NCBI GenBank assembly: GCA_002269645.1
Contig: NIVC01002358.1
Location: forward strand, 62,001 to 126,000
Direction of reading: 5' to 3'
Length of the DNA stretch: 64,000 bases
Source: Macrostomum lignano
Lineage: Eukaryota
The translations under genes were made by a program, and so were the position numbers. Below, piece by piece: positions 7,707-61,348 of the stretch. Position 1 is the stretch's first letter. Every line of letters begins with the position of its first letter. The notes beneath the pieces are model-generated. The model ran no database searches. It worked only from the letters and a program-made list of their open reading frames with translations, and was not told where the DNA came from.

Positions 7707-10520
7707 TCAGTCATGCCGAAGGCTCGTCCCCGCGGTTGTGGCTGAAGCGGCTGTGGCTGCATCAGCGTCAACGGCTGCAGCGGCAGCGGCTGCGCAGTCA
7801 GCCGGCTGGGTCTGCATCGCGCTGTGGCCGAACATCAGCGAGCGTATCGTCTCGTCCAGGTGGTTCACAGACTCGCGCACCGTGACGATCACTAAGCACC
7901 GAGAGCTGCCAGTCAAGTGCGGCTGCAGCAGGCGGGTGAGCTTGCTCTCACGGAAGCAGGGCCGCTGCCTTTTTCGCAGATCTTCGAACACCTTGCCCAG
8001 GCTGAGCAGTGACCGGTTGATGGCGGACGCTTCGCGAAGGCCGGCGCCGCACACGCCCGACTTCTGAACGGACTCGGAGCCCGCCAGGTCGCAGAGGGTC
8101 AGGGTGCTGGTCACCGACTGACTCGTGACTGTACAGGCGTCAGTGAGATGATGGTCTGGTTACTAAGTTAGTTTCGGTGAACTATCACTGACGTCTCACT
8201 GCTCAAAACGCATAATTCTCAAATTTTTTAATGATAAAGAAGAAAAACTCACGCTCAGAGGCAGCACCACTTTCGCCGCTGACCCGCAGCATGACAATCA
8301 CGTGACTTCGGGAGCTGACCCCATTGAGCCTGGTGGCCGAGTAGATTCGGGTCCGTTCGCAGCGCGCGATGCACCGGTCAATGTCGGCTTCGGACGTCAC
8401 CGGGATCTCCGTGAGGCCTTGGATTGCAGCCGCGCCGCTGACGTCAGTCATGAGTTTCAGCCCCTTCGGAGCGGTGCCGCCAGCGTTGGCTGCTCGAGGC
8501 GGTCGAAGGAGATCGCGAATGTCTTCGTTGTAGACCTCAACCGCGCACATTGCGAAGCTGAACTGCCAGCCGGAGCGGCCGCGGCAAGCCCGCAGCACGG
8601 AGGCGATGGCCAGACGGTTGACGCCCGGGTTCAGCTGATCGCCAACCATGGTGTGGGTCTTGCCTGTCTGGGAGCCGGTTGGGGAGGAAGCTGCTTGAAA
8701 GGATCGTAAAAATCTGTACAATAAGCTTTCTTGTTTAAGCCTGGTGACGCGTGTGACTCCCTGATCTACTTGATCTGATTGATGATGCATCCAGAATATG
8801 CTTTTCATTTGCCGGTCACGATTCTTTAGTCTGCAGCTGGGTCACTTCGATTCATCCGCTCCGAGGTTCATTGCTCTACTTTGGGGATCTTTTGCGACGA
8901 CTTGTTTTGCTCCTGCTGTAGATCGTAGCACGATTATTAAAGATCCCTAAGCAAGCCCTACAGTTTTCAATGACAATCACGAAAGCATCAGTTAGCCTCA
9001 CCGCTGCCCGTCTGTCCGTAAGCCATGATGCAGACATTGTGGCCGCTGCAGCAGGAGCCGACGAGCTCCGTCATGGCGCCGAACACGCAGGCGCTCGAGC
9101 TCTCCGGACCGAACACTCGTCGTAGTAAAAAGCGCGGCTGTCAAATGAGTTTAGACTGGCGTTGGCGCCGGGAACGCCGCGCGTCCGCAAGAGAATTTTG
9201 CACCTGCCGGCAACCTTCAACAGGCCGGCGCTATCGTCTGGGCGAATGCGCACAAAGATGCGCAGCTTGCCGCGTCGGTCGTCCGGAATCGCGCGACCGC
9301 CGGCCGCGCCATCCATCCCCCACGAGGCCACTGAACTCGGCGTCGACAACCGGCACCGCTGCTGATGCGGAGACGGCTGGCGGTGGCTGGGGAGCATCGT
9401 CATGGACATCGATCTAGTCGTGCGAGACTCCTCCTCGTCCAGGTCGCTCCTGTCGTCCTCTTTCGCAATTGAAGCTGCTTCAACTGCCGCTGTAGCCGCT
9501 GCCGTAGTTGCCGCGTGCAACTGCTCCGAGAGGTGGCACACCTGCAGCATTGCTTGATCTCTTTCAGTTTTCAGTCGGCGGGCGAGCTCCTTCAGCTGGC
9601 GGCGCTGCTCCTTGGCATCGCGTAGCACTCTCTTCAGCTTGGCTTGCCGAGCGCGCAGGCAGCGGTTTTCGCGCTCCGCCTGTTGTACGCGGTTGACCAG
9701 CTCTCCTACGAAGTCCTGGCTGGCGGCACTGGAGGAGGGATTGAGGGCCGGAGTGGTCCGGAGTGTGCATAGTCGTAAAATTTCCCACTTTATCTGCAAG
9801 GTGTCGAATAGCCGAGCTTGCTGCCTTATCGCCCAGATGTAGCGACATAATTATGAATTTTAGAGACTGCTAAATGGAGTAATTTGGTTTTACAAAAAAT
9901 CAGGAACCCTAGTAGGTAAAAAATGCAAATCATAAATTGGAACTTAGATTATCCGCTCACCGCTCTCTGCAGTCTCCAGTGCCTAGATCGCTGAGCCGCG
10001 GCAGATTCGTTGAGCTTTGGTCGCCGGCGGCACCGCTGCCTGCGACTCCCTGCTGCAACTGCGCCGCCTCTTCTAACGTCGCACGCAGCCGAGACTCGAG
10101 TTGACGCAGCTCGGCCCGCAGCGCAGGCGGACAGAGTCGCAGTCGCCTGTGGAAGTCGCTCAGTTGGTCGGTGCACTCAAAGGCGCGCAGGGCGGCGCAC
10201 TCAGCCGGTGCCAGATAGGCCTGCGGACCACGTTGAAGCCTTTCCGAAGCACCTGGTGGTTCATCGGTCGCTTCGGTGGAGGCTGCAAGCAGGCGACGCC
10301 GGTCGCGAGCCATGTTTGCCAGCGCGGCGGTCAGCGCGGATAGCAGGCGCGCCAGGCGCTCTCGGGCTGTTATCCACGGTCCCGTCGCCGTCTCATCTGT
10401 AGTAGCTGCTGCTGGTGAAGTTGGAGATGCTCCGCTAGCGCCGCCAGCACTGCAGGAAGCCGATCGGCTGTGGGAGCTTTGGCAGGCGGAGCCGAGGGTA
10501 AAGCGATCAGCCGCTGACAT
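7707..10520 (-). CDS. C-terminal-motor kinesin (kinesin-14/KIFC-like), 4 exons, one apparent 1-nt frameshift near 9118
   Basis: Exons ~10520-9961, ~9824-9002, 8663-8253, 8128-7707. Coiled coil, then neck RGKLRIFVRIRP; P-loop AYGQTGSG|KTHTM rebuilt across the intron at 9001-8664; switch I NGVSSRSH; switch II DLAGSE; EASAINRSLLSLG and FRESKLTRLLQ. The exon 2 acceptor is uncertain. Confidence 0.9.
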
Positions 10521-42330: not shown

Positions 42331-43107
42331 TTATAGTTTTATTATAATAATAATTTTATTTCGCACTTGTATTTTTGTTTCCAAACTGTAACTATTTGTA
42401 AATGCGTCACATGTCTTCTCCAAATGCATTAAAATTGTGCTCTAATTTGTAAAAAAATGGATTGATTTTGTAGACGCGAAAGCAATGTTAAATATATTTT
42501 TTCAACATTTTCATTATCTAAAAAATTAAAATACAGACTACTGTTCACCGATAGCTTAGAAGTAGTGCATTGAGAACATGACATACAATATTAAAATTTC
42601 TAGTGTATAAGCACTATTGGCGGTATAATATACTGATGCAAAATCCATGCCCTGGCACCTGCGCACCGCCAATATTACGGTTTCGATCCCCTGGTCTGTT
42701 TCCCCCCCCCAACCCCCACCTCATTCAGTCAGTGCATCCCGTCAGGCCTTGGCTTCTAGGCTCTGCATTGGCGCGCAGCGTGTACCTTTCTTCTGGGTGC
42801 GAGAAAAGTGGTAAACATCGGATTCCTTCTAAAACACCTGGTCGAGGGGCATTCATTTCTTGGGTTGCCGGCCGAAAGGCTGTATACGCTCGTAAACCTT
42901 AATTAGGGGCAGCGCAGAGTTGCTAACGAAGCGCCAGTAGAAGTCGGAAGACGCGACTTAAACAGGTTCGGCGGCTGTCCCACCGGCAGTTACTTTAGTC
43001 TCCTGTTGCAGGTTTGAAACTAGAAAATCTGAAGCCAAAACAGCGGCGCTAGCCAGGATAATTTAGCAAATTATTCAACCAGACAGCATTGCGGACACGC
43101 GCACGCG

Positions 43108-44049
43108 ATGAGCCTGACTGCCATCGCCGAGGAGCCGCCACCGTCGCCTCCGCCGTCGCCTCCGCCGAATCCGCAGCCGCAACCGGCGCCTCCTCCATCA
43201 TCGCCTTCGCCTCCACCGACGCCACCGACGCCTCCATCGCCTGCATCTCCGCAGACGCCAAACGAGTCTTCGCTGATGGACGGCGGCGAGTGCGGCGGCG
43301 GTGCCAAACCGGAGGCGGCCCAGCGGCTCGGCCTCCGGTGTCACCGCCTGCGGGCGGCCGCCTCCGCGGTGTACTATGCGGTCGCCCTGGCCGCCCTGGC
43401 CGCCTCCGCCGTCCTGCTGATCGGAGGCTTCCGCAGCGGCTCCCGCGCCGCCCTGACCGCCGGCACCCTGCTGCTGTGCGCCGCCTTCGGCCTGTGCACC
43501 AACCGCTGCTGCCTCGGCCAGCTGCTCGGCTCTCCGCCCACCGCCGCCGCCGTCGGCACCAAGGCAGCCTCGTCTCTCTCGTCGCCGTCAACGGGGAAAA
43601 AGTCGCCGCGGAAGGAGCGCCCGGAGGCGTCGGCGTCGGTGGCCGCGATGGCCAAGCGGAGCTTCCGGCTGGCCGCGGTGGCCGCCGCAGCAGCGGCGTC
43701 GGCCTCGGACGAAACGGCAGCGGCGTCGTCTTCGCCGCCGACAACACCGCGTCGGGCGCCGCTGAACGTCAACGGCCCCCTGCTGGGCGGCGGCCGGCGC
43801 TGCTCGGCATTCGGCCTCGGCCCGGGCGACCCCGCGGCCCGCCTGGCGTTCATGCGGCAGCGCTCGGCGCCCGGCTCGGCGTCTGGCGCCGCTGCGGTTG
43901 TCGCCGGCGCCGGCGGTGGCAGCGGTGGCCGGCGGATGAGCTCCGCGCTGCAGCTGCAGCAGCTGGCCGCCTCGGCAGACGATGGCGACGATGCCGGCGG
44001 CTGCTGGATGTCATCCGGAGGCCTCGGGGAGTTTGTCGAATTCGCCTGA
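43108..44049 (+). CDS. Single-exon 313-aa protein: Pro-rich N-terminus, two predicted TM helices, Ala/Ser-rich tail
   Basis: GC3-rich ORF with hydrophobic segments AVYYAVALAALAASAVLLIGGF and AALTAGTLLLCAAFGLC. No family recognised. Confidence 0.6.
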   Translation: MSLTAIAEEPPPSPPPSPPPNPQPQPAPPPSSPSPPPTPPTPPSPASPQTPNESSLMDGGECGGGAKPEAAQRLGLRCHRLRAAASAVYYAVALAALAASAVLLIGGFRSGSRAALTAGTLLLCAAFGLCTNRCCLGQLLGSPPTAAAVGTKAASSLSSPSTGKKSPRKERPEASASVAAMAKRSFRLAAVAAAAAASASDETAAASSSPPTTPRRAPLNVNGPLLGGGRRCSAFGLGPGDPAARLAFMRQRSAPGSASGAAAVVAGAGGGSGGRRMSSALQLQQLAASADDGDDAGGCWMSSGGLGEFVEFA

Positions 44050-44954: not shown

Positions 44955-47900
44955 AATGACTTTGAAATCGACAGCCCTGTATTTGAAATCGACAACCCTG
45001 TATTTGAAATCGACAACCCTGTATTTGAAATCCACAACCCTGTATTTGAAATCCGCAACCCTGTATTTGAAATCCACAACCCTGTATTTGAAATCCACAA
45101 CCCTGTATTTGAAATCGTCAACCCTGTATTTGAAATCGACAACCCTGTATTTGAAATCGACAACCCTGTATTTGAAATCGCCAACCCTGTATTTAAAATC
45201 GCCAACCCTGTATTTGAAATCGACAACTCTGTATATGAAATCGACAACCCTGTATTTGAAATCGACAACCCTGTATTTGAAATCCACAACCCTGTATATG
45301 AAATCGACAAACCTGTATTTGAAATCGACAACCCTGTATTTGAAATCGCCAACCCTGTATTTGAAATCGACAGCCCTGTTATTTGAAATCGACAACACTG
45401 TATTTGAAATCCACAACCCTGTATTTGAAATCCACAGCCCTGTTATTTGAAATCCACAACCCTGTATTTGAAATCCACAACCCTGTATTTGAAATCGACA
45501 ACCCTGTATTTGAAATCCACAACCCTGTATTTGAAATCCACAACCCTGTATTTGAAATCCGCAACCCTGTATTTGAAATCCACAACCCTGTATTTGAAAT
45601 CGACAACACTGTATTTGAAATCGCCAACCCTGTATTTGAAATCGACAGCCCTGTTATTTGAAATCCACAACCCTGTATTTGAAATCCGCAACCCTGTATT
45701 TGAAATCCACAACCCTGTATTTGAAATCCACAACCCTGTATTTGAAATCGACAGCCCTGTATTTGAAATCCACAACACTGTATTTGAAATCGCCAACCCT
45801 GTATTTGAAATCGACAGCCCTGTTATTTGAAATCCACAACCCTGTATTTGAAATCCACAACCCTGTATTTGAAATCCACAACCCTGTATTTGAAATCGCC
45901 AACCCTGTATTTGAAATCGCCAACCCTGTATTTGAAATCGACAGCCCTGTATTTGAAATCCACAACCCTGTATTTGAAATCCACAACCCTGTATTTGAAA
46001 TCGACAGCCCTGTATTTGAAATCGCCAACCCTGTATTTGAAATCGACAGGTCTGTATTTGAAATCGTCAGCCCTGTATTTGAAATCGCCAACCCTGTATT
46101 TGAAATCGCCAACTCTGTATTTGAAATCGACAACCCTGTATTTGAAATCGAAAACCCTGTATTTGAAATCGACAGCCCTTTTATTTGAAATCCACAACCC
46201 TGTATTTAAAATCCACAACCCTGTATTTGAAATCGACAACCCTGTATTTGAAATCCACAACCCTGTATTTGAAATCCACAACCCTGTATTTGAAATCCGC
46301 AACCCTGTATTTGAAATCCACAACCCTGTATTTGAAATCGACAACACTGTATTTGAAATCGCCAACCCTGTATTTGAAATCGACAGCCCTGTTATTTGAA
46401 ATCCACAACCCTGTATTTGAAATCCGCAACCCTGTATTTGAAATCCACAACCCTGTATTTGAAATCCACAACCCTGTATTTGAAATCGACAGCCCTGTAT
46501 TTGAAATCCACAACACTGTATTTGAAATCGCCAACCCTGTATTTGAAATCGACAGCCCTGTTATTTGAAATCCACAACCCTGTATTTGAAATCCACAACC
46601 CTGTATTTGAAATCCACAACCCTGTATTTGAAATCCACAACCCTGTATTTGAAATCCACAACCCTGTATTTGAAATCCGCAACCCTGTATTTGAAATCCA
46701 CAACCCTGTATTTGAAATCGACAGCCCTGTATTTGAAATCCGCAACCCTGTATTTGAAATCCACAACCCTGTATTTAAAATCCACAACCCTGTATTTGAA
46801 ATCCACAACCCTGTATTTGAAATCCACAACCCTGTATTTGAAATCGACAACCCTGTATTTGAAATCCACAACCCTGTATTTGAAATCCACAACCCTGTAT
46901 TTGAAATCCGCAACCCTGTATTTGAAATCCACAACCCTGTATTTGAAATCGACAACACTGTATTTGAAATCGCCAACCCTGTATTTGAAATCGACAGCCC
47001 TGTTATTTGAAATCCACAACCCTGTATTTGAAATCCGCAACCCTGTATTTGAAATCCACAACCCTGTATTTGAAATCCACAACCCTGTATTTGAAATCGA
47101 CAGCCCTGTATTTGAAATCCACAACACTGTATTTGAAATCGCCAACCCTGTATTTGAAATCGACAGCCCTGTTATTTGAAATCCACAACCCTGTATTTGA
47201 AATCCACAACCCTGTATTTGAAATCCACAACCCTGTATTTGAAATCGCCAACCCTGTATTTGAAATCGCCAACCCTGTATTTGAAATCGACAGCCCTGTA
47301 TTTGAAATCCACAACCCTGTATTTGAAATCCACAACCCTGTATTTGAAATCGACAGCCCTGTATTTGAAATCGCCAACCCTGTATTTGAAATCGACAGGT
47401 CTGTATTTGAAATCGTCAGCCCTGTATTTGAAATCGCCAACCCTGTATTTGAAATCGCCAACTCTGTATTTGAAATCGCCAACCCTGTATTTGAAATCGC
47501 CAACTCTGTATTTGAAATCGATAACCCTGTATTTGAAATCGAAAACCCTGTATTTGAAATCGACAGCCCTTTTATTTGAAATCCACAACCCTGTATTTAA
47601 AATCCACAACCCTGTATTTGAAATCGACAACCCTGTATTTGAAATCCACAACCCTGTATTTGAAATCCGCAACCCTGTATTTGAAATCCACAACCCTGTA
47701 TTTGAAATCCACAACCCTGTATTTGAAATCCACAACCCTGTATTTGAAATCCACAACCCTGTATTTGAAATCGACAGCCCTGTATTTGAAATCCACAACA
47801 CTGTATTTGAAATCGCCAACCCTGTATTTGAAATCGACAGCCCTGTTATTTGAAATCCACAACCCTGTATTTGAAATCCACAACCCTGTATTTGAAATCC

Positions 47901-48825
47901 ACAACCCTGTATTTGAAATCCACAACCCTGTATTTGAAATCCACAACCCTGTATTTGAAATCCGCAACCCTGTATTTAAAATCCACAACCCTGTATTTGA
48001 AATCCACAACCCTGTATTTGAAATCGACAGCCCTGTATTTGAAATCCACAACCCTGTATTTGAAATCCACAACCCTGTATTTTAAATCGACAGCCCTGTA
48101 TTTAAAATCCACAACCCTGTATTTGAAATCCACAACCCTGTATTTGAAATCCACAACCCTGTATTTGAAATCCACAACCCTGTATTTGAAATCCACAACC
48201 CTGTATTTGAAATCGACAGCCCTGTATTTGAAATCCGCAACCCTGTATTTGAAATCCACAACCCTGTATTTAAAATCCACAACCCTGTATTTGAAATCCA
48301 CAACCCTGTATTTGAAATCCACAACCCTGTATTTGAAATCCACAACCCTGTATTTGAAATCCACAACCCTGTATTTGAAATCCACAACCCTGTATTTGAA
48401 ATCCACAACCCTGTATTTGAAATCCACAACCCTGTATTTGAAATCGACAGCCCTGTATTTGAAATCCGCAACCCTGTATTTGAAATCCACAACCCTGTAT
48501 TTGAAATCCACAACCCTGTATTTGAAATCCACAACCCTGTATTTGAAATCCACAACCCTGTATTTGAAATCGACAGCCCTGTATTTGAAATCCGCAACCC
48601 TGTATTTGAAATCCACAACCCTGTATTTAAAATCCACAACCCTGTATTTGAAATCCACAACCCTGTATTTGAAATCCACAACCCTGTATTTGAAATCCAC
48701 AACCCTGTATTTGAAATCCACAACCCTGTATTTGAAATCCACAACCCTGTATTTGAAATCCACAACCCTGTATTTGAAATCCACAACCCTGTATTTGAAA
48801 TCGCCAACCCTGTATTTGAAATCCA
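44955..48825. repeat. 3.9-kb 21-bp satellite (ccctgtatttgaaatccacaa) with higher-order structure
   Basis: About 185 copies with a constant frame and a variable ~6-nt core (ccacaa, cgacaa, ccgcaa, cgccaa, cgacag); periodic 22-bp marker units. Confidence 0.97.
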
Positions 48826-49562: not shown

Positions 49563-52500
49563 ATGTCAGCCTCCGCTGTTCTACATCCTTGGCATTCTCC
49601 GATTGCCGCTCTGTTGAAGCTGCTGCCGCCGCTGCTGGCGGTGGTGCTGTTGATGATGGGTCTGCCGCGGACAGGTGAGCTGATTCTCAAAGAAGATTTC
49701 TTCTTTTGGGAAGCTTTTAGGAAAGATGGGATGTCAAAGTAGGAATTATGGACGGATTGATGTAGAAAAAATAGGAAAGATAGAGGGGAACAAGGGGGAG
49801 ATTGATGGGTGAATCCAGGAGATGAGATCCAGAGAGAGAGACGAAGGACAGAGGGAGAGATGAGAGACAGAGGGGGAGATGAGAGATTGAGAAAGAGATG
49901 AGAGATTGAGGGGAGACAATGGACAGAGGGGGGAGGAGAGGGACAGAGGGGGAGGAGAGGGACAGAGGGGGAGATGAGGGACAGAGGGGGAGATGAGGGA
50001 CAGAGGGGAGATGAGGGACAGAGGGAGAGATGAGGGACAGAGGGGGAGATGAGGGACAGAGGGGGAGATGAGAGATTGAGGGAGAGATGAGGGACAGAGG
50101 GGGAAATGAGGGACAGAGGGGGAGGAGAGGGACAGAGGGGGAGATGAGGGACAGAGGGGGAGATGAGGGACAGAGGGAGAGATGAGGGACAGAGGGGGAG
50201 ATGAGGGACAGAGGGGGAGAGATGAGGGACAGAGGGGGAGATGAGGGACAGAGGGGGAGATGAGGGACAGAGGGGGAGGAGAGGGACAGAGGGGGAGGAG
50301 AGGGACAGAGGGGGAGGAGAGGGACAGAGGGGGAGGAGAGGGACAGAGGGGGAGGAGAGGGACAGAGGGGGAGATGAGGGACAGAGGGGGAGATGAGGGA
50401 CAGAGGGGGAGATGAGAGATTGAGGGGAGACAATGGACAGAGGGGGGAGATGAGGGACAGAGGGGGAGATGAGGGACAGAGGGGGAGGAGAGGGACAGAG
50501 GGGGAGATGAGGGACAGAGGGGGAGATGAGGGACAGAGGGGAGATGAGGGACAGAGGGGAGGAGAGGGACAGAGGGGGAGATGAGGGACAGAGGGAGAGA
50601 TGAGGGACAGAGGGGGAGATGAGGGACAGAGGGGGAGATGAGGGACAGAGGGAGAGATGAGGGACAGAGGGGGAGATGAGGGACAGAGGGGGAGATGAGG
50701 GACAGAGGGGGAGATGAGGGACAGAGGGGGAGATGAGTGATTGAGGGGAGACAATGGACAGAGGGGGAGGAGAGGGACAGAGGGGGAGGAGAGGGACAGA
50801 GGGGGAGATGAGTGATTGAGGGGAGACAATGGACAGAGGGGGAGGAGAGGGACAGATGGGGAGTGATGAGGGACAGAGGGGAGTGATGAGGGACAGATGG
50901 GAGTGATGAGGGACAGAGGGGGAGTGATGAGGGACAGAGGGGAGAGCACCAGAGCTGCATCGCCTACCTTTTCCGCAACCCGACAGCTGAGGCCGCCTGC
51001 AACAGCAGTTTGAACATCTCGGAGATCAGTGAGACCACACCAGCCGGTTATGGCATCTACTCAATCGACTCAAGCTACCAGAACACCCTGCTGGGACTGC
51101 CTGAGTACATCTGCTACTTTGAGCTCAGTGGCGGCTTCCTGCGACTCGCTCGCACCTTCGATCTCGAGAATTTCACCTCGTGCAGCGACGGCTCAACCAT
51201 CTCGAAAGCGTCCGTGCCGTCCGCCATCACCGTCACCATTCAGTGCACATCATCTTCGGACACGGCCACCTTCCTCATCCGGCTGGTGGATGTGAACGAG
51301 TTCCCGCCAGCCTTCAGCCCGAACTACTTTGCGGTGAACGTGTCTGAGGTCTGCGCGCTTTGATGGATTGCTAATCTAGCCAAGATGCATGAATCACCAA
51401 GCAATACGTTGACCACCCCTCTCCACCCTCCAGTCAGCCAGTGTCAACACGCTCATCACGCAGCTCAACAGTCACGTGACCGACGCCGACAAGTCCAATC
51501 AGCTGACCTTCAACTTTCAACTGACGGTGCGCAGCTGATGCATTTTTCTACTTTTTTCTTCTCCACACACTCCCTTGTCAACCCTCTGCAGACTGTCAGC
51601 TCCCAGCCTAAGGACTCCCCTACCCAGCCTACAGACTCTCCTACCCAATCTACAGACTCCCCTACCCAATCTACAGACTCCCCTACCCAATCTACAGACT
51701 CCCCTACCCAATCTACAGACTCCCCTACCCAGCCTACAGACTCCCCTACCCAGCCTACAGACTCCCCTACTCAGCCTACAGACTCCCCTACCCAGCCTAC
51801 AGACTCCCCTACCCAGCCTACAGACTCCCCTACCCAATCTACAGACTCTCCTACCCAGCCTACAGACTCTCCTACCCAGCCTACAGACTCTCCTACCCAG
51901 CCTACAGACTCTCCTACCCAGCCTACAGACTCCCCTATCCAGCCTACAGACTCCCCTACCCAGCCTACAGACTCTCCTACCCAGCTTACAGACTCCCCTA
52001 CCCAGCCTACAGACTCCCCTACCCAGCCTACAGACTCCCCTACCCAGCCTACAGACTCCCCTACCCAATCTACAGACTCCCCTACCCAATCTACAGACTC
52101 CCCTACCCAATCTACAGACTCGCCTACCCAATCTACAGACTCCCCTACCTAGCCTACAGACTCCCCTACCCAATCTACAGACTCCCCTACCCAATCTACA
52201 GACTCACTCAAGCGTTTCCCTTCCACCCGCTCTGCCAGAACGGCACACTGGGCAGTTTCTACATCATAGACGGCATTACATCCGGGATCGTGCGGCTGCA
52301 GCGGACGCTGGACTTTGACGCCGGACCGCGCCAGTACATCATGACCGTGGCGGCCTCCGAGCTGCCGACCGAGCCGGCCAGCCAGCCGGCGGCGCTGACG
52401 GGCTTCGCCACCCTGGTGGTGAACGTCTTGGACTACGACGATCAAAATCCTGAGTTCACTCAGAACTCGTACTCGCTGTACTTTATGGAGAATGTGAGTG

Positions 52501-55500
52501 ACGTCACTAGCATGTGTTTATTAAACCGCTTCAGGGCTCCGGTTCAGGGGAACCTGTAAAACTTTAGTGGTTACCAAGCAAAGTAACTCCAGGTTTGTGG
52601 GCACCCGGGTTGCAACGCCTTTGGTGACAATGTCCCACAGCCAGCGCTCGTATCATCTTTCCTCAGGTGATTGATTGGTTAAAACCACGAGACATTTTTC
52701 GGGTCCAAAAAGGTTCACTTAGTCAAAGAATTGTTTGACCTCTCTTTTGTTCTGAGGTGAGATTCTGTATCCAAGAAATGCTCGCAAATATCAATAGACT
52801 CGTACGATTTTCGGCCAACCGAGCGGCTTGGCAGCGTTGAGACACTTTTGAAGAGCATCTACATTATCTAGAATTACGAGTACGTCACCCTGTTAGATGA
52901 GCAGACCTTTTATATCAGAGAGGCTGCTCTCCATCATGCGTTGAAGAATTCAACCGCGATGCAGACCTCTAGAAGTGTTTGCGACGAAGTGTAACTGATG
53001 TCCTTCAGAGGGTACCATAATTTCTACTTTCAACAAAGGGTCCAGCCTCTTACTGCTTAGTGATCTCTTCATCCTCCAGTTGTCATATCTAGCCGTGCAA
53101 ACTAAAGCAAAAGGCAGTGAAAGCGGCTGATTGAACCCCCCCCCCTCCCACGGCTCCATCCAGAACACCGCTTACATGAACTCACCGCTGACCCCCTCCC
53201 ACGGCTCCATCCAGAACACCGCTTACATGAACTCACCGCTGACCCCCTTCCACGGCTCCATCCAGAACACCGCTTACATGAACTCGCCGCTGACCCCCTC
53301 CCACGGCTCCATCCAGAACACTGCTTACATGAACTCGCCGCTGACCCCCTCCCACGGCTCCATCCAGAACACCGCTTGCATGAACTCGCCGCTGACCCCC
53401 TCCCACGGCTCCATCCAGAACACCGCTTACATGAACTCGCCGCTGACCCCCTCCCACGGCTCCATCCAGAACACCGCTTGCATGAACTCGCCGCTGACCC
53501 CCTCCCACGGCTCCATCCAGAACACCGCTTGCATGAACTCGCCGCTGACCCCCTCCCACGGCTCCATCCAGAACACCGCTTGCATGAACTCGCCGCTGAC
53601 CCCCTCCCACGGCTCCATCCAGAACACCGCTTACATGAACTCGCCGCTGACCCCCTCCCACGGCTCCATCCAGAACACCGCTTACATGAACTCGCCGCTG
53701 ACGGCCAGCCCACCGCTGCTGGCCCTCGACCAGGATGTGGGCATCAACGAGACCATAAATTATGCTATCGTTTCCGGTAAGCTAACAGTTGTTTGACGTG
53801 GTGATTCGTCTTAATAATAAATAAATTCTATTGAAGTGAAAAAACTGAGAAATTCTGCCCCAATTTTCCAGCTTATTGGTGGAATTCGGCAGGTAATAAT
53901 ATATATTCATTGAGAACTAATCCAAGTATTCTATTAATGAGTTATCTAATACTAAACAGGGTGTCAAACGGGCGTGCCACTTTATTGCTAGGGTCGTAGT
54001 TTTGGTTACCAGGCCACCAGTTTGGTTACCAGGGCCACTAGTTTGGTTACCAGGGCCACCAGTTTAGTTGACAGAGCCATCCGTTTAGTTGCCAGGGCCA
54101 CCAGTTTAGTTGGCAGGGCCACCAGTTTGGTTGCCAGGGCCACCATTTTGGTTGCCAGGGCCACCAGTTTGGTTGCCAGGGCCACAATTTTGGTTGCCAG
54201 GGCCCCCAGTTTGGTTGCCAGGGCCACCAGTTTGGTTGCCAGGGCCACCAGTTTGGTTGCCAGCGCCCCAGTTTAGTTGCCAGGGCCACCAGTTTGGTTA
54301 CCGGGGCCACCAGTTTGGTTTCCAGGGCCACCAGTTTGGTCACCAGGGCCACCAGTTTGGTTTCCAGGGCCACCAGTTTAGTTGACAGAGCCATCCGTTT
54401 AGTTGCCAGGGCCACCAGTTTAGTTGGCAGGGCCACCAGTTTGGTTGCCAGGGCCACCAGTTTGGTCACCAGGGCCACCAGTTTGGTTTCCAGGGCCACC
54501 AGTTTAGTTGACAGAGCCATCCGTTTAGTTGCCAGGGCCACCAGTTTAGTTGGCAGGGCCACCAGTTTGGTTACCGGGGCCACCAGTTTGGTTTCCAGGG
54601 CCACCAGTTTGGTCACCAGGGCCACCAGTTTGGTTTCCAGGGCCACCAGTTTAGTTGACAGAGCCATCCGTTTAGTTGCCAGGGCCACCAGTTTAGTTGG
54701 CAGGGCCACCAGTTTGGTTACCGGGGCCACCAGTTTGGTTTCCAGGGCCACCAGTTTGGTCACCAGGGCCACCAGTTTGGTTTCCAGGGCCACCAGTTTA
54801 GTTGACAGAGCCATCCGTTTAGTTGCCAGGGCCACCAGTTTAGTTGGCAGGGCCACCAGTTTGGTTGCCAGGGCCACCAGTTTGGTTGCCAGGGCCACCA
54901 TTTTGGTTCCCAGGGCCACCAGTTTGGTTGCCAGGGCCACCATTTTGGTTGCCAGGGCCCCTAGTTTGGTTGCCAGTTGGTTGGCAACCAGTTGGCAACC
55001 AGTTTAGTTGCCTTCCAGATAAAAAAATTAATAATTACGCTTTTGTAGGCGTCTCGTGTTCGAACATTTAGAGCTGCTAATTTTTGGCATTTTGTTTTAC
55101 TGCTTTAATTCGCTTAGTTTGGTGCGTAACAATGTGCTTTAAATATAATTGTAAATCTTTTTTACAACTCACTCAATCTCACAAAATTAAAACTTTCCTG
55201 TTTTTTTCCTTCAAACAATCTCGCCTTCTCAAATGCCATTCCGCACACTCAGGCTCGCAGATTGACAACACCAGCTTCATCGCCATCAACTCCACCACGG
55301 GCCAGTTCAGCATCGTCAGCCTCATCGACAGGGAGAGTCTGCCAGCCAGCCAGCTGTTTGTGCTGGTCAAGGTACGCGATCCCGATCCCGATCCCGAATC
55401 CCGATCCCGAATCCCGATCCCGAATCCCGATCCCGAATCCCGATCCCGAATCCCGATCCCGAATCCCGATCCCGAATCCCGATCCCGAATCCCGATCCCG

Positions 55501-58500
55501 AATCCCGATCTCGAATCCCGATCCCGAATCCCGATCCCGAATCCCGATCTCGAATCCCGATCCCGAATCCCGATCCCGAATCCCGATCCTGAATCCCGAT
55601 CCCGAATCCCGATCCCGAATCCCGATCCCGAATCCCGATCCCGAATCCCGATCCCGAATCCCGATCCCGAATCCCGATCCCGAATCCCGATCCTGAATCC
55701 CGATCCCGAATCCCGATCCCGAATCCCGATCCCGAATCCCGATCCCGAATCCCGATCCCGAATCCCGATCCCGAATCCCGATCCCGAATCCCGATCCCGA
55801 ATCCCGATCCCGAATCCCGATCCCGAATCCCGATCCCGAATCCCGATCCCGAATCCCGATCCCGAATCCCGATCCCGAATCCCGATCCCGAATCCCGATC
55901 CCGAATCCCGATCCCGAATCCCGATCCCGAATCCCGATCCCGAATCCCGATCCCGAATCCCGATCCCGAATCCCGATCCCGAATCCCGATCCCGAATCCC
56001 GATCCCGAATCCCGATCCCGAATCCCGATCCCGAATCCCGATCCCGAATCCTAATCTGGAATCTCAAATCCCAATCTGGAATCTCAATCTGGAATCTCAA
56101 ATCTCAATCTGGAATCTCAAATCTCAATTTGGAATCTCAAATCTCAATTTGGAATCTCAAATCTCAATCTGGAATCTCAAATCTCAATCTGGAATCTCAA
56201 ATCTCAATCTGGAATCTCAAATCTCAATTTGCAATCTCAAATCCCAATCTGGAATCCCGAATCCCGAATCAGAATGAAGTTGGGCAAATGTCCCTAAAAT
56301 ATCCCGCAGGGCTATCAAACCGACAAGCCCGCCACCCGGGTGGCGCTGGCCCTGGTGCTGGTGACGGTCGGAGACAGAAACGACAACGCTCCGGTCATGT
56401 CTGCAACAGACTACTCAGCCACCATAGTAGAGAATTCGCCCGCTGGAACTTTTGTCATTGGCGTGTCCGCCACTGACAGAGACCTGGTGAGCTCAACTCT
56501 CGGCTCGTTGTTGCATCATGTACTTCGAATCCTGGAAATACCGCTAGCCTTACGAGATTTCCAGTCACGGGAATTTCACAGGGATTTCCATTCTTATGGG
56601 ATTTCCAGTCTTGCAGGGTTTTCAATTTTGTGGGATTTCCTGTCTCGAGGGATTTCCTGTTTCGAGGGATTTCCAGTATTGTGGGATTTCCAGTTTTGTG
56701 GGACTTCCAGTTTTGTGGGATTTCCTGTCTCGAGGGATTTCCTGTCTTTGTGGGATTTCCAGTATTGTTGGATTTCCAGTTTTGTGGGATTTCCAGTTTT
56801 GTAGGACTTCAAGTTTTGTAGGACTTCCAGTTTTGTGGGATTTTCAGTTTTGTGGGATTTCCAGTTTTGTGGGATTTCCAGTTTTGTGGGATTTCCAGTT
56901 TTGTGGGATTTCTAGTTTTGTGGGATTTCCTGTCTCGAGGGATTTCCTGTCTTTGTGGGATTTCCAGTATTGTGGGATTTCCAGTTTTGTGGGATTTCCA
57001 GTTTTGTGGGATTTCCAGTATTGTGGGATTTCCAGTTTTGTGGGATTTCCAGTTTTGTGGGATTTCCAGTATTGTGGGATTTCCAGTTTTGTGGGATTTC
57101 CAGTTTTGTGGGATTTCCAGTTTTGTGGGATTTCCAGTCTTTGTGGAATTTTCAGTCTTGTGGGATTTCCAGCTTCGCGCTTCTGAGACTCTCAAGCATC
57201 CCTACAACCGTTGCAGGGCGAGAATTCCACAGTCAGCTATCTGCTGGCCGATCCCAGTGGCGCCTTTCAAATCGATCCCAACAGCGGTCACGTGACTGTG
57301 GCCAACGCCAGCCTGCTGGACCGGGAGGCAACGCCAGAGTTCAATGTTACAGTGAGTTCAGTTTTTCCCACTGACCTACTGAAAGTACCAAGACTGGATG
57401 CGGGGTCGCCTGGTATCTGACTTGGGATCAGGAAGGGATGAATCGTGTAGCTGTAAGGTCCCGGATTCGATTCCGCCCACCGCAACATAATCACTTAGTG
57501 TCTGTCGGGATAATTCGGGATTCGGGATGGATAATTCGGGATTCGGGATGGATAAGCCGGGATTCGGGATGGATAAGCCGGGATTCGGGATGGATAAGTC
57601 GGGATTCGGGATGGATAAGTCGGGATTCGGGATCGATAAGCCGGGATTCAGGATGGATAATTCGGGATTTGGGATGGATAAGTCGGGATTCGGGATGGAT
57701 AAGTCGGGATTCGGGATGGATAAGTCGGGATTCAGGATGGATAATTCGGGATTCGGGATGGATAATTCGGGATTCAGGATGGATAATTCGGGATTCAGGA
57801 TGGATAATTCGGGATTCGGGATGGATAATTCGGGATTCAGGATGGATAATTCGGGATTCAGGATGGATAATTCGGGATTCAGGATGGATAAGTCGGGATT
57901 CGGGATGGATAAGCCGGGATTCAGGATGGATAATTCGGGATTCAGGATGGATAATTCGGGATTCGGGATGGATAATTCGGGATTCGGAGTGGATAAGTTG
58001 CCCCTTCGACTAGTTAATTAACCGAACAGGTCAGTAGCTATACGCAGCAACCAATGGCCTTTCGAAGGTCTGGTCGGAGGAGACGGCCACGCCCGAGCGT
58101 TTTGCCTCGACGCCGTCCCGCCTGACCATCCGCCTGACCGACGTCAACGACAACTCGCCGGTCTTCGCCAACGCCTCGGGCATCAGCATCAGCCTGGACC
58201 GCTCGGTCGCTACGCCTGGAGCCGCCCTGCACACGCTGGTTGCTACGGACGCGGATTCTGGAATTAACGGTCAGCTGACATTCAGTATAGTCTTTGTCAG
58301 CGTGCCCGGGGCTGAGTCTTTGTTCAACTTGGACTCGGGCAGCGGACTGCTGACGGCTGCGGCTGGACTGTCGTCTGCGCCCGGGGATCTGTGAGCCAAC
58401 AGGAGGATGCATTTTGATGGAGCTGGTGCCATTTTTGTCTGTGTTTGACCTGTGCCAGTTTGAGAAGAGTGCCAGTTTGAGAAGAGTGCCAGTTTGAGAA

Positions 58501-61348
58501 GAGTGCCAGTTTGAGAAGAGTGCCAGTTTGAGAAGAGTGCCAGTTTGAGAAGAGTGCCAGTTTGAGAAGAGTGCCAGTTTGAGAAGAGTGCCAGTTTGAG
58601 AAGAGTGCCAGTTTGAGAAGAGTGCCAGTTTGAGAAGAGTGCCAGTTTGAGAAGAGTGCCAGTTTGAGAAGAGTGCCAGTTTGAGAAGAGTGCCAGTTTG
58701 AGAAGAGTGCCAGTTTGAGAAGAGTGCCAGTTTGAGAAGAGTGCCAGTTTGAGAAGAGTGCCAGTTTGAGAAGAGTGCCAGTTTGAGAAGAGTGCCAGTT
58801 TGAGAAGAGTGCCAGTTTGAGAAGAGTGCCAGTTTGAGAAGAGTGACAGTTTGAGAAGAGTGCCAGTTTGAGAAGAGTGCCAGTTTGAGAAGAGTGACAC
58901 CTTACCTGATCAATGCACAAAAACCTTCACCAGCTTCGTCTTAAACGTCGTGGCGGAGGACCGTGCGGAGCCGTCGTCCGCGCGGCGCCGTTCCACCGTC
59001 TCGTTGTCGGTACGCCTGACGAGCTCCACCAGCAGCAGCGCCAGCACCGTGGCGACCACTTCGTCAGACGCTGTCACCAGCAGCAGCAGCCAGGCGCCTA
59101 CTTCAACAACCAGCAGTTCGACGACAAGCACCACGACGACAACGACGACGACCTCCACGACTTCAACAATGGCAACTTCTGCTGCGCCAGCGGAGTCGTG
59201 GAACGCCTCAGTAGCCGCATCGGCAGTCTGGATGATTAACGACAGCCACGCAACGGTTGAGGTGATGTCCATGTCTGTAATAATATATATATATATATAA
59301 TACAGCCTCCTGTATGCAGGGTAGGGAGGGGCTCTGGGCAGCTTGACTCTGGTACAAAAAATAATGCAATGCCCCACTCTGACTACTGACTTCCAGCTTC
59401 GAACCACACAGATCAGCAGCAGTGGCAATCAGACTGTTACCATGGAAACCGTTGTCCTGCCAGTCAACTCCAGTCTTATCGCCCAGGCGCCAACTACCGA
59501 AGCGCCGTCGACCTCGACGAGTGGCTCAACCTCGCTGACAACGCCCGAGTCGGTCACGTCGTTGGAGTCGCTGAACGCCACGACGTACGAAGCTGCAACA
59601 ACAAGCGAGACGACAGCGGCACCGACGGAGCAGCTGGTCCAGCCGGCGCCGCTGGGGCTGATCGTGGCCTGCGCACTGCTGGCGGTGATCGCCTCTGTGC
59701 TGGGCCTGCTGCTCGGCTGGTTCCTGTTCGAGCGGTCCCGCCTGAAGGCGCTGGCCGCGGAGCGTCTGGCAACCATCGAGAGCCTGCAGCAGAAGACCAA
59801 CCCCATCTTCTCCAACGGGCAGCACCCGCCGCCGCCGGAAGTCGGGCCGGAGTCGTGAGTTGCTTCCTCGGGAAATTTTGATTTAGTGTATTTATCAGTG
59901 ATCGAATTTATTCACAAAACAGACTACTTATTTGCGACTTCAAGTAGTATGAAGCCGAGAGGGGACGGGGCGCCATGAACGGCGACATGAAGAGTCAACG
60001 GCGATCTGAGCCAGAATGGGGACAAGGAGAGCCAGAATGGGGACAAGGAGAGCCAGAATGGGGACAAGGAGAGCCAGAATGGGGACAATGAGAGCCAGAA
60101 TGGAGACAAGGAGCGCCAGAACGGGGACAATGAGCGCCAGACCGGGGACAAGGAGCGCCAGAATGGGGACAAGGAGAGCCAGAATGGGGACAAGGAGAGC
60201 CAGAATGGAGACAAGGAGAGCCGGAATGGGGACAAGGAGAGCCGGAATGGGGACAAGGAGAGCCAGAATGGAGACAAGGAGAGCCAGAATGGGGACAAGG
60301 AGAGCCGGAATGGGGACAAGGAGAGCCAGAATGGAGACAAGGAGAGCCAGAATGGAGACAAGGAGAGCCGGAATGGGGACAAGGAGAGCCGGAATGGGGA
60401 CAAGGAGAGCCAGAATGGAGACAAGGAGAGCCAGAATGGAGACAAGGAGAGCCGGAATGGGGACAAGGAGAGCCGGAATGGGGACAAGGAGAGCCAGAAT
60501 GGAGACAAGGAGAGCCAGAATGGAGACAAGGAGAGCCGGAATGGGGACAAGGAGAGCCAGAATGGAGACAAGGAGAACCAGAATGGAGACAAGGAGAGCC
60601 GGAATGGGGACAAGGAGAGCCGGAATGGGGACAAGGAGAGCCAGAATGGAGACAAGGAGAGCCAGAATGGAGACAAGGAGAGCCGGAATGGGGACAAGGA
60701 GAGCCGGAATGGAGACAAGGAGAGCCAGAATGGAGACAAGGAGAGCCAGAATGGAGACAAGGAGAGCCAGAATGGAGACAAGGAGAGCCGGAATGGGGAC
60801 AAGGAGAGCCGGAATGGGGACAAGGAGAGCCAGAATGGAGACAAGGAGAGCCAGAATGGAGACAAGGAGAGCCGGAATGGGGACAAGGAGAGCCAGAATG
60901 GAGACAAGGAGAACCAGAATGGAGACAAGGAGAGCCGGAATGGGGACAAGGAGAGCCGGAATGGGGACAAGGAGAGCCAGAATGGAGACAAGGAGAGCCA
61001 GAATGGAGACAAGGAGAGCCGGAATGGGGACAAGGAGAGCCGGAATGGAGACAAGGAGAGCCAGAATGGAGACAAGGAGAGCCAGAATGGAGACAAGGAG
61101 AGCCAGAATGGGTAAAGGAGCGCCAGAAAAAAGGAAGGAGACAGGTCGCTAGGGGGTTTTCAGGCTCTAGTGGAGAATCATCCTTCATCCCCTGAGTCTA
61201 ACTCAGTCCAGCTCGAATCGCTCGCAGTGCCCTCAGCGGCAGCCACTCGCAGCCAGACGGGTCAGCGGCGATCTACGTGTCCCAGCAGCTGGCGCCAGAC
61301 CCGGCCTACCAGACTCTCTCCGTGTCCATGCCCGTCTCGGACTTTTAG
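49563..61348 (+). CDS. Cadherin-related protein: signal peptide, 5 EC repeats, Ser/Thr mucin-like stalk, TM helix, tail with NPIF and C-terminal SDF; 12 exons
   Basis: Phase-consistent exons 49563-49674, 50987-51348, 51434-51526, 52239-52493, 53674-53776 (or an upstream acceptor copy), 55253-55371, 56310-56486, 57217-57351, 58038-58390, 58934-59261, 59397-59854, 61228-61348. Ca-binding motifs DVNEFPP, DYDDQNP, DQD, DRNDNAP, DRD, DRE, DVNDNSP, DAD. Confidence 0.9.
49850..50945. repeat. GA-rich ~19-bp minisatellite (gagggacagagggggagat), cadherin intron 1
   Basis: About 55 copies, purine-rich. Confidence 0.93.
51600..52205. repeat. 21-bp minisatellite (cagcctacagactcccctacc), cadherin intron 3
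   Basis: About 28 copies. Confidence 0.94.
53141..53701 (+). repeat. 51-bp x 11 tandem repeat spanning the intron 4/exon 5 boundary of the cadherin
   Basis: Unit ccccctcccacggctccatccag|AACACCGCTTACATGAACTCGCCGCTGA; AG ends at 53163 and every +51 to 53673. Confidence 0.96.
54000..54990. repeat. 21-bp minisatellite (agtttggttgccagggccacc) with a recurring higher-order block, cadherin intron 5
   Basis: About 47 copies; the variant gttgacagagccatccg recurs. Confidence 0.93.
55378..56270. repeat. cccgat/cccgaat microarray followed by a 20-bp ggaatctcaaatctcaatct array, cadherin intron 6
   Basis: Starts 6 nt after the donor at 55372. Confidence 0.95.
56620..57170. repeat. 17-bp minisatellite (ccagttttgtgggattt), cadherin intron 7
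   Basis: About 30 copies. Confidence 0.92.
57510..57995. repeat. 21-bp minisatellite (ggattcgggatggataagtcg), cadherin intron 8
   Basis: About 23 copies. Confidence 0.94.
58450..58900. repeat. 17-bp minisatellite (gagtgccagtttgagaa), cadherin intron 9
   Basis: About 26 near-identical copies. Confidence 0.95.
60008..61112. repeat. 21-bp minisatellite (gagccagaatggggacaagga), last cadherin intron
   Basis: About 52 copies with two independently varying positions. Confidence 0.95.

What the first reader, a model, noticed from the sequence alone, without database searches (positions are those of the whole stretch)
53141..53776. Eleven complete, in-frame 3' splice sites in tandem: a repeat-encoded length switch in a cadherin
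Seen: the 51-bp unit is the last 23 nt of intron 4 plus the first 28 nt of exon 5. Where one copy joins the next, the exon's CTGA plus the following C makes CTGAC (branch-point consensus), followed by a pyrimidine-rich tract and CCAG, so every copy is a full acceptor. 51 is a multiple of 3 and the frame is stop-free, giving (TPSHGSIQNTA[Y/C]MNSPL)n, with Cys in 4 of 11 copies. Inference: acceptor choice could give isoforms with 0-10 extra 17-aa units at the start of EC3, just after the Ca-binding linker. Alternatively, the cell skips ten good acceptors to reach the distal one, against the usual first-AG scanning rule. Both outcomes are unusual, and array copy number could vary between alleles.
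Basis: partly seen in the sequence, partly recalled or inferred. Interest (0 to 1): 0.85.

Follow-up and report, generated by a model that had tools for sequence, protein, structure and literature searches.

The report
Splice-acceptor minisatellite in flatworm cadherin
A 51-base stretch spanning an intron-exon border of a Macrostomum lignano cadherin gene has been copied head-to-tail 11 times, giving 11 identical splice acceptors. It looks like a young, copy-number-variable repeat, of which the annotated mRNA uses only the last copy, not a built-in protein length switch.

Summary
Window 53141-53702 holds 11.0 copies of a 51-bp unit at 98% identity. Each unit is 23 nt of intron 4 plus 28 nt of exon 5, and each carries CTGAC, a pyrimidine-rich tract and CAG. 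The array is in frame and stop-free, with Cys in 4 units.

The window is Macrostomum lignano (Mlig_3_7 contig NIVC01002358.1), cadherin gene Mlig000043g1. Two sister loci in the same assembly, 98-99% identical, carry 2 units and 1 unit.

It is one of about ten minisatellites in this gene. Tandem arrays make up 75% of the gene's intronic bases, and every array compared differs in size between the three loci.

All three annotated proteins contain one unit, meaning the distal or only acceptor. A 49%-identical paralogue aligns without a gap across the junction. No evidence supports a "length switch". The "first-AG rule" argument does not apply, because each unit has its own branch point.

Use of upstream acceptors could not be tested, because no RNA reads were reachable. 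The closest precedents are donor-side minisatellites (F7 IVS7, IFI6, CBS, LMNB2, PDGF). This is the acceptor-side mirror image: a neat natural test case, probably inert.

The parts
52239..52493 (+). Coding exon 4 of cadherin Mlig000043g1. It ends ...YSLYFMEN in phase 0, and the donor GTGAGT starts at 52494.
   Evidence: The exact exon chain reproduces P0001; sequence read.
52494..53673 (+). Intron 4 as annotated. It has 647 nt of unique sequence followed by units 1-10 and the intronic part of unit 11.
53127..53131 (+). CTGAT, the likely ancestral branch-point motif. Its A is at 53130, which is -34 from the first acceptor. It lies outside the repeat unit and is present in the 1-copy and 2-copy loci.
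   Evidence: Motif match only; branch use is inferred.
53141..53702 (+). The 51-bp x 11 minisatellite. Each unit is the last 23 nt of intron 4 plus the first 28 nt of exon 5. Each carries one CAG acceptor (exon starts at 53164+51n) and a CTGAC at -24.
53674..53776 (+). Coding exon 5 as annotated, using the distal (11th) acceptor. It encodes NTAYMNSPLTASPPLLALDQDVGINETINYAIVS. Locus-discriminating SNPs lie at 53714 (T in L003) and 53730 (T in L002).
53872..53892 (+). A 21-nt micro-exon (AYWWNSA) in the annotated mRNA.
49563..61348 (+). The whole cadherin CDS: 13 coding exons, Pfam Cadherin x4, a Ser/Thr-rich stalk, a transmembrane segment and a short tail.

Best explanation
This is a young, copy-number-variable minisatellite that happened to form across the intron 4/exon 5 border of a Macrostomum lignano cadherin gene.

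Origin (inferred from comparing the three loci). A 51-bp tandem duplication arose by slippage or unequal exchange, with 1 nt of microhomology. It occurred after this locus and L002 split from L003. It then expanded from 2 to 11 units in this locus only. Variant units spread in blocks: TGC in units 5 and 7-9, TCA in units 1-2.

Shown from sequence. Each unit carries a complete local acceptor signal.

Inferred for RNA. The spliceosome pairs the exon 4 donor with the distal acceptor. That is the only acceptor followed by the unique exon 5 body and its donor 103 nt away, as exon definition would favour. It mirrors donor-side minisatellites, where the site abutting the exon is used. The ten upstream copies would then be removed within the intron as silent or nearly silent pseudo-acceptors, and the protein keeps its ancestral one-unit A-B loop.

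The array has no dedicated function. It is tolerated because the distal copy restores the normal mRNA and because two further gene copies exist.
For: - TRF finds 51 bp x 11.0 copies at 98% identity.
- L001 equals the window with 0 mismatches. L002 has 2 units and L003 has 1 unit. Unique intron 4 sequence is 99.4% identical between L001 and L002, and 98.2-98.5% identical to L003.
- Every other minisatellite compared, inside the gene and just upstream of it, also differs in copy number among the three loci.
- Tandem arrays make up 28.3% of the window and 74.9% of this gene's intronic bases, and they lie 6-150 nt from most splice sites.
- The genome is reported as 15% simple and tandem repeats, with 180 Mb of blocks that are at least 95% identical (PMC5730564).
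- The annotated proteins P0001, P0121 and P0122 each contain one unit. Exact exon chains place the acceptor at the 11th copy in the window and the 2nd copy in L002.
- Paralogue P0005 aligns without a gap: YFMEN|DTSYLNRSLETSPVLLARDGD.
- The distal unit is identical to the single copy in L003.
- In three of the five donor-side minisatellite genes listed in PMC1557585 (F7, LMNB2, PDGF), only the site adjacent to the exon is used.
Against: - No RNA reads were examined.
- The annotation is RNA-seq-guided (StringTie/TACO), but reads from the 1-copy and 2-copy loci can multi-map to the distal junction of this locus.
- The GenBank gene set was filtered against transcripts overlapping repeats, so missing isoforms are weak evidence of absence.
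- All 11 acceptors are sequence-identical from -24 to +28 and are the top-scoring AGs in the intron.
- Predicted RNA structure does not mask the upstream ones (z = +1.69).
- Two donor-side precedents (IFI6, CBS) do use one or two extra sites.
- The old globin duplication experiments gave conflicting answers on which copy wins.
Confidence: 0.68

Rival explanations
1. Multi-acceptor allele. Several of the 11 acceptors, most likely the ones nearest the distal end, are really used. This locus would then produce a 51-nt ladder of in-frame mRNAs, giving cadherins whose EC3 A-B loop is lengthened by 17-aa units. Array copy number would set the isoform repertoire.
For: - All acceptors are identical from -24 to +28 and each has its own CTGAC.
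- The array has no GT, one AG per unit and an open frame, so products would escape re-splicing and NMD.
- No masking RNA structure is predicted.
- The donor-side arrays in IFI6 and CBS use 2 extra sites.
- The insertion point is a loop already 5 residues longer than in CELSR1.
Against: - No annotated isoform with extra units exists at the 11-copy or 2-copy locus.
- The paralogue and the 1-copy locus show that one unit is the functional form.
- The insertion would sit directly after the conserved Glu of the xEN motif, which is Ca-binding by general cadherin knowledge (alignment).
- The only proteins containing several units are poor ab initio models with frameshifts (P0003, P0004, P0123).
Confidence: 0.22
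2. The proximal acceptor wins. Under co-transcriptional 'first come, first served' or 5'->3' scanning, the first acceptor (53164) would be used. This allele would then encode a cadherin with a 170-aa insertion. That would make it effectively a variant or crippled copy, tolerated because two other copies exist.
For: [quoted passage not shown]
- The first acceptor keeps the ancestral CTGAT branch motif at -34.
- Internal exons of 323-458 nt exist in this gene.
Against: - The annotated model for this very locus uses 53674.
- The resulting 613-nt exon would be the longest in the gene.
- The opposite result was also reported for duplicated sites.
Confidence: 0.07
3. Assembly artefact. The true locus would have 1-2 units, and the 11 copies would come from mis-assembly of repetitive long reads.
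For: The genome is highly repetitive and redundant, and the assembly is a draft.
Against: - 561 bp is far shorter than PacBio reads.
- The units carry an ordered pattern of 5 variant types.
- A gene model that I attribute, from memory, to another assembly reproduces the last four units in order.
- The neighbouring arrays also vary between loci in a consistent way.
Confidence: 0.03

Closest known systems
Human F7 intron 7 37-bp VNTR (also the LMNB2 and PDGF intronic minisatellites)
   Same: A polymorphic minisatellite whose terminal monomer spans an exon-intron border, so that the authentic splice site is reiterated as identical, potentially functional pseudo-sites. Only the site abutting the exon is used (PMC1557585).
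   Different: Those arrays reiterate the 5' (donor) site and lie downstream of the exon. Here the 3' (acceptor) site, with its branch point and pyrimidine tract, is reiterated upstream of the exon. Usage here is inferred from annotation, not measured.
Human IFI6 (6-16) and CBS intron 13 minisatellites
   Same: A minisatellite supplies multiple splice sites, and some extra copies are really used, which lengthens the mRNA (as described in PMC1557585). That the IFI6 additions are in frame is from memory of Turri et al. 1995, which is not held in the library. This is the model for the rival 'ladder' reading.
   Different: They are donor-side. Use of extra sites is experimentally shown there and is untested here.
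Tandem alternative acceptors (NAGNAG and other closely spaced tandem splice sites)
   Same: Alternative in-frame acceptors at one intron end could add or remove a few residues.
   Different: NAGNAG sites share one branch point and pyrimidine tract and are 3 nt apart (from general knowledge). Here each site is a complete, independent acceptor 51 nt from the next, and alternative use is not shown.
Coding VNTRs (mucin-type tandem repeats within exons)
   Same: In-frame, stop-free, copy-number-variable units rich in Pro, Ser and Thr.
   Different: The annotated mRNA does not include the array. Only the last 28 nt of it are exonic.

Membership tests
Minisatellite / VNTR | Head-to-tail tandem copies of a 10-100 bp unit | tested here: met
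   51 bp x 11.0 copies, 98% matches, no indels.
Minisatellite / VNTR | Copy number differs between alleles or copies of the locus | tested here: met
   11, 2 and 1 units in three 98-99% identical loci of one assembly. Whether these are alleles or recent duplicates was not resolved.
Splice-site-spanning minisatellite (F7 IVS7 type) | The terminal monomer contains the authentic exon-intron junction, so identical sites are reiterated in the intron | tested here: met
   The unit is 23 nt of intron plus 28 nt of exon, and the distal unit is continuous with exon 5. It is on the acceptor side, not the donor side.
Splice-site-spanning minisatellite (F7 IVS7 type) | Reiterated sites are silent pseudo-sites (or used at low level) in vivo | not testable with these tools
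   Only annotation was available. One unit is present in all three annotated CDS. No RNA reads or transcript contigs were reachable.
Tandem alternative acceptors (NAGNAG/TASS) | Two or more acceptors demonstrably used in transcripts | not testable with these tools
   No isoform with extra units is in the protein cluster of the three loci.
Tandem alternative acceptors (NAGNAG/TASS) | Sites a few nucleotides apart sharing one branch point and pyrimidine tract | tested here: not met
   The spacing is 51 nt, and each unit has its own CTGAC at -24 and its own tract.
Cadherin superfamily | Repeated EC domains with DxNDNxP-type linkers | tested here: met
   Pfam PF00028 at E = 8.5e-39 with 4 stretches. 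Linkers DVNEFPP, DYDDQNP, DRNDNAP and DVNDNSP are present. The best PDB match is CELSR1 8vy2 at 1.8e-74.
Coding (exonic) tandem repeat | The array lies inside an exon and is translated | tested here: not met
   The exon chain that reproduces the annotated protein starts exon 5 at the 11th copy. Only ab initio UniRef models translate units.

The most novel reading that the evidence does not exclude
The array acts as a natural multi-acceptor. More than one of the 11 identical 3' splice sites is used in vivo. The 11-, 2- and 1-unit copies of the gene would then give different ladders of cadherin isoforms, with an EC3 A-B loop lengthened in 17-aa steps. Alternatively, in this SL-trans-splicing animal, orphan acceptors left inside the mRNA might be trans-spliced, giving truncated transcripts that could start at the in-frame ATG of the unit.
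Probability: 0.22. Interest if true: 0.6.

Novelty: new variant of a known kind. Interest (0 to 1): 0.38.

Why it matters
If the distal-only reading holds, biologically this is an ordinary neutral repeat in a genome unusually rich in minisatellites.

Its value is as a natural experiment. One genome carries 1, 2 and 11 identical, complete 3' splice sites (branch point, tract, AG) in otherwise 98-99% identical genes, in an animal with working transgenesis. That is the acceptor-side counterpart of the F7 intron 7 system, which was used to study 5' splice-site choice. It could show how a spliceosome picks among identical acceptors: by exon definition, by order of transcription, or by proximity.

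It is also a caution for annotation. UniProt already holds ab initio models that translate the array units.

Tried and rejected
1. RNA-level evidence. Two junction-focused protein searches, meant to pull out transcript-derived (Logan) ORFs, returned only the 99-aa UniRef model P0125. They did not even return P0001, which contains the query exactly. The index is therefore lossy for short queries, and the absence of hits is uninformative. All three protein searches are now used.

2. My first hand-built gene model was wrong in two places. It missed the 21-nt micro-exon, and it took acceptor 58038 instead of 58068. Exact chaining to P0001 corrected it.

3. A greedy spliced aligner locked onto the first array copy and then stalled. 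This illustrates that the first 10 residues of exon 5 match every unit.

4. The exon chain for L003/P0122 did not complete. The single copy there was read directly instead.

5. The PWM built from the gene's 11 other acceptors is crude. I used it only to show that the array sites are equal to each other and rank top among the intron's AGs.

6. RNA folding found no structure that could mask upstream acceptors.

7. Literature searches for an acceptor-side minisatellite precedent found none in the held library. Turri et al. 1995 is not held.

8. I rejected open frame and period divisibility by 3 as evidence of coding. The prior for a multiple of 3 is 1 in 3, and about half of the other long arrays in the window are also open in at least one + strand frame.

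Full report
OBSERVATION

Tandem Repeats Finder reports 53141-53702, period 51, 11.0 copies, 98% matches, no indels, score 1068.

Reading the units in register gives ccccctcccacggctccatccag|AACACCGCTTACATGAACTCGCCGCTGA. That is 23 nt that are intronic in the last copy, followed by the first 28 nt of the exon. Exon-start positions fall at 53164+51n, and the last is 53674.

The frame continuous with exon 5 is open through the whole array. It reads (TPSHGSIQNTA[Y/C]MNSPL)n, with TGC in units 5, 7, 8 and 9.

Unit 3 has an S->F change, unit 4 a silent ACT, and units 1-2 a silent TCA.

The array has exactly 11 AG dinucleotides, one per unit, and no GT.

WHAT THE LOCUS IS

The spliced translation is a cadherin: Pfam PF00028, E = 8.5e-39, four stretches. 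Its best database match is Macrostomum lignano hypothetical protein BOX15_Mlig000043g1 (P0001, PAA58588.1).

The DNA fetched for that protein is contig NIVC01002358.1 of assembly GCA_002269645.1. It is identical to the window over the 17,438 bases that overlap.

Chaining GT-AG exons so that the translation equals P0001 exactly gives 13 coding exons. The annotated mRNA uses the 11th, distal acceptor.

By motif count (linkers DVNEFPP and DYDDQNP), exon 5 opens the third EC repeat. An alignment to CELSR1 (PDB 8vy2) places NTAYMNSPLT in the A-B loop, directly after the conserved xE[ND] and before strand B. That loop is already 5 residues longer here than in CELSR1.

COMPARATIVE EVIDENCE

The 90% cluster of P0001 contains two more annotated proteins from the same assembly, Mlig010783g1 (P0121) and Mlig028117g1 (P0122). 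Their loci are L002 and L003, and where the fetched flank reaches (L001 and L002) the same CD36-family gene lies downstream.

- L002 has two units and L003 has one.
- The 647-649 nt of unique intron 4 upstream of the array are 99.4% identical between the window and L002. They are 98.2-98.5% identical to L003.
- The simplest history is therefore one unit, then a duplication in the common ancestor of L001 and L002, then expansion to 11 units in this locus only.
- The distal unit plus exon 5 is identical in all three loci except for two SNPs, at 53714 and 53730, which together distinguish the three loci.
- The single copy in L003 shows that the duplicated segment is simply local sequence. CTGAC is already present in the ancestral exon as codons CTG ACG.

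The array is not special in this gene. Most of its introns (9 of 12) hold a different minisatellite, with periods of 13-21 bp. Each array compared, including the large 21-bp array just upstream of the gene, has a different copy number in the three loci. Examples are 52/84/106 copies of the 13-mer and 183/>=108/13.5 copies of the upstream 21-mer.

Tandem arrays cover 28.3% of the window and 74.9% of the gene's intronic bases. Most splice sites lie within 6-150 nt of an array. The genome paper reports 15% simple and tandem repeats, and 180 Mb of duplicated blocks at least 95% identical, linked to extra large chromosomes in the sequenced DV1 line (PMC5730564). In such a genome an array that straddles a splice site is expected now and then.

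A period divisible by 3 and an open frame are weak evidence. About half of the other long arrays in the window are also open in at least one + strand frame.

SPLICE-SIGNAL ANATOMY

Every unit has a CTGAC whose A is 24 nt upstream of the exon start. The tract from -20 to -4 is 76% pyrimidine, at the upper end of the 53-88% range of this gene's other acceptors. Each unit ends in CAG.

With a small PWM built from the gene's 11 other acceptors, the array sites score equally (7.5 bits; unit 3 scores 6.4). They are the top-scoring AGs among the 59 in the intron.

Only two copies differ in context. The first keeps the ancestral CTGAT at -34. The last is followed by the unique exon body and a donor 103 nt away.

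The pre-mRNA across the array is predicted to be less structured than shuffled controls (z = +1.69). Masking of upstream sites by structure is therefore not indicated.

The array has no GT, so a product made at an upstream acceptor could not be re-spliced within the array. It would stay in frame.

WHAT THE mRNA LOOKS LIKE

All three annotated proteins have exactly one unit: YFMEN|NTAYMNSPLTASP[P/L]LLALDQD. In L002 the exon chain uses the second of the two copies.

A 49%-identical M. lignano paralogue (P0005) aligns without a gap across the junction: YFMEN|DTSYLNRSLETSPVLLARDGD. One unit is therefore the ancestral, functional form.

The annotation was built from RNA-seq with StringTie/TACO plus a mapped de novo transcriptome, so it is indirect RNA evidence. 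Two caveats apply. Reads from the 1-copy and 2-copy loci can multi-map to the distal junction here. Also, the GenBank set was filtered against transcripts overlapping repeats.

The only proteins that contain several units are UniRef models P0003, P0004 and P0123. These are fragmentary and contain frameshifted stretches. They are ab initio read-throughs, not splicing evidence. P0003 does reproduce the window's last four units in order (C,C,Y,Y). I take these models to come from the older ML2 assembly (from memory), which argues against an assembler artefact.

MECHANISM

Best explanation (0.68). This is a neutral, young copy-number-variable minisatellite. Its distal copy serves as the acceptor, and the ten upstream copies leave with the intron as pseudo-acceptors.

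The preference for the distal site is inferred, not shown. It rests on the annotation, on exon definition (only the distal site has the real exon body and donor behind it), and on symmetry with donor-side arrays.

Scanning runs from the selected branch point, and each unit has its own branch point with no AG before its CAG.

Rivals:
- Several acceptors are used, giving a 51-nt ladder (0.22).
- The proximal acceptor is used, giving a 170-aa insertion (0.07).
- The array is an assembly artefact (0.03).

KNOWN COMPARATORS

PMC1557585 describes minisatellites whose first monomer spans an exon-intron border and so reiterates the donor site.

- F7 IVS7: 37 bp x 5-9, only the first site used.
- LMNB2 and PDGF: only the authentic site used.
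- IFI6/6-16 and CBS: two extra sites used.

The present array is the acceptor-side mirror image. I found no acceptor-side precedent in the held library, which is not proof that none exists. It is not a NAGNAG-type site, because the spacing is 51 nt and each site has its own branch point. By the annotation it is not a coding VNTR.

VERDICT

The 'length switch' is unsupported but not excluded.

I classify it as a new variant of a known kind. Interest is moderate: it is a clean natural substrate for studying 3' splice-site choice, and most likely biologically inert.

The decisive test is haplotype-resolved junction counting in existing RNA-seq, or RT-PCR from exon 4 to exon 7.

Noticed in passing
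window 49818-61128 (also L002, L003): Nine of the 12 introns of the cadherin gene carry their own minisatellite, with periods of 13-21 bp. Arrays make up 74.9% of intronic bases, and each array compared has a different copy number in the three near-identical loci.
   Followed up: partly
window 55372-56051: The 13-bp array (CGATCCCGAATCC x 52) starts 6 nt after the last base of exon 7, so the intron side of that donor runs straight into a hypervariable array. The same array has 84 copies in L002 and 106 in L003.
   Followed up: partly
window 53872-53892: A 21-nt micro-exon (AYWWNSA) with good flanking signals (ttttccag|...|gtaata) is annotated in all three loci. It is absent from the paralogue alignment, so it may be lineage-specific or alternative.
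   Followed up: partly
window 58028-58068: There is a cluster of AGs before exon 10. An in-frame TAG acceptor at 58037/58038 would add 10 residues (LYAATNGLSK) relative to the annotated acceptor at 58067/58068, which has a weak tract. The paralogue supports 58068. This is a possible genuine alternative tandem acceptor.
   Followed up: partly
window 44961-48825: A very large 21-bp array (183.5 copies, 3.9 kb) lies just upstream of the gene. It has only 13.5 copies at L003.
   Followed up: partly
UniRef models P0003, P0004, P0123, P0125: Public protein databases hold fragmentary M. lignano models that translate the array units or start at the ATG inside a unit. These are annotation artefacts caused by the open frame of the repeat.
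   Followed up: partly
window 7710-8159 (- strand) and 43033-44046 (+ strand): There is a kinesin-motor-like open frame on the minus strand. There is also a long Pro/Ala-rich open frame with hydrophobic stretches. Neither was examined.
   Followed up: no
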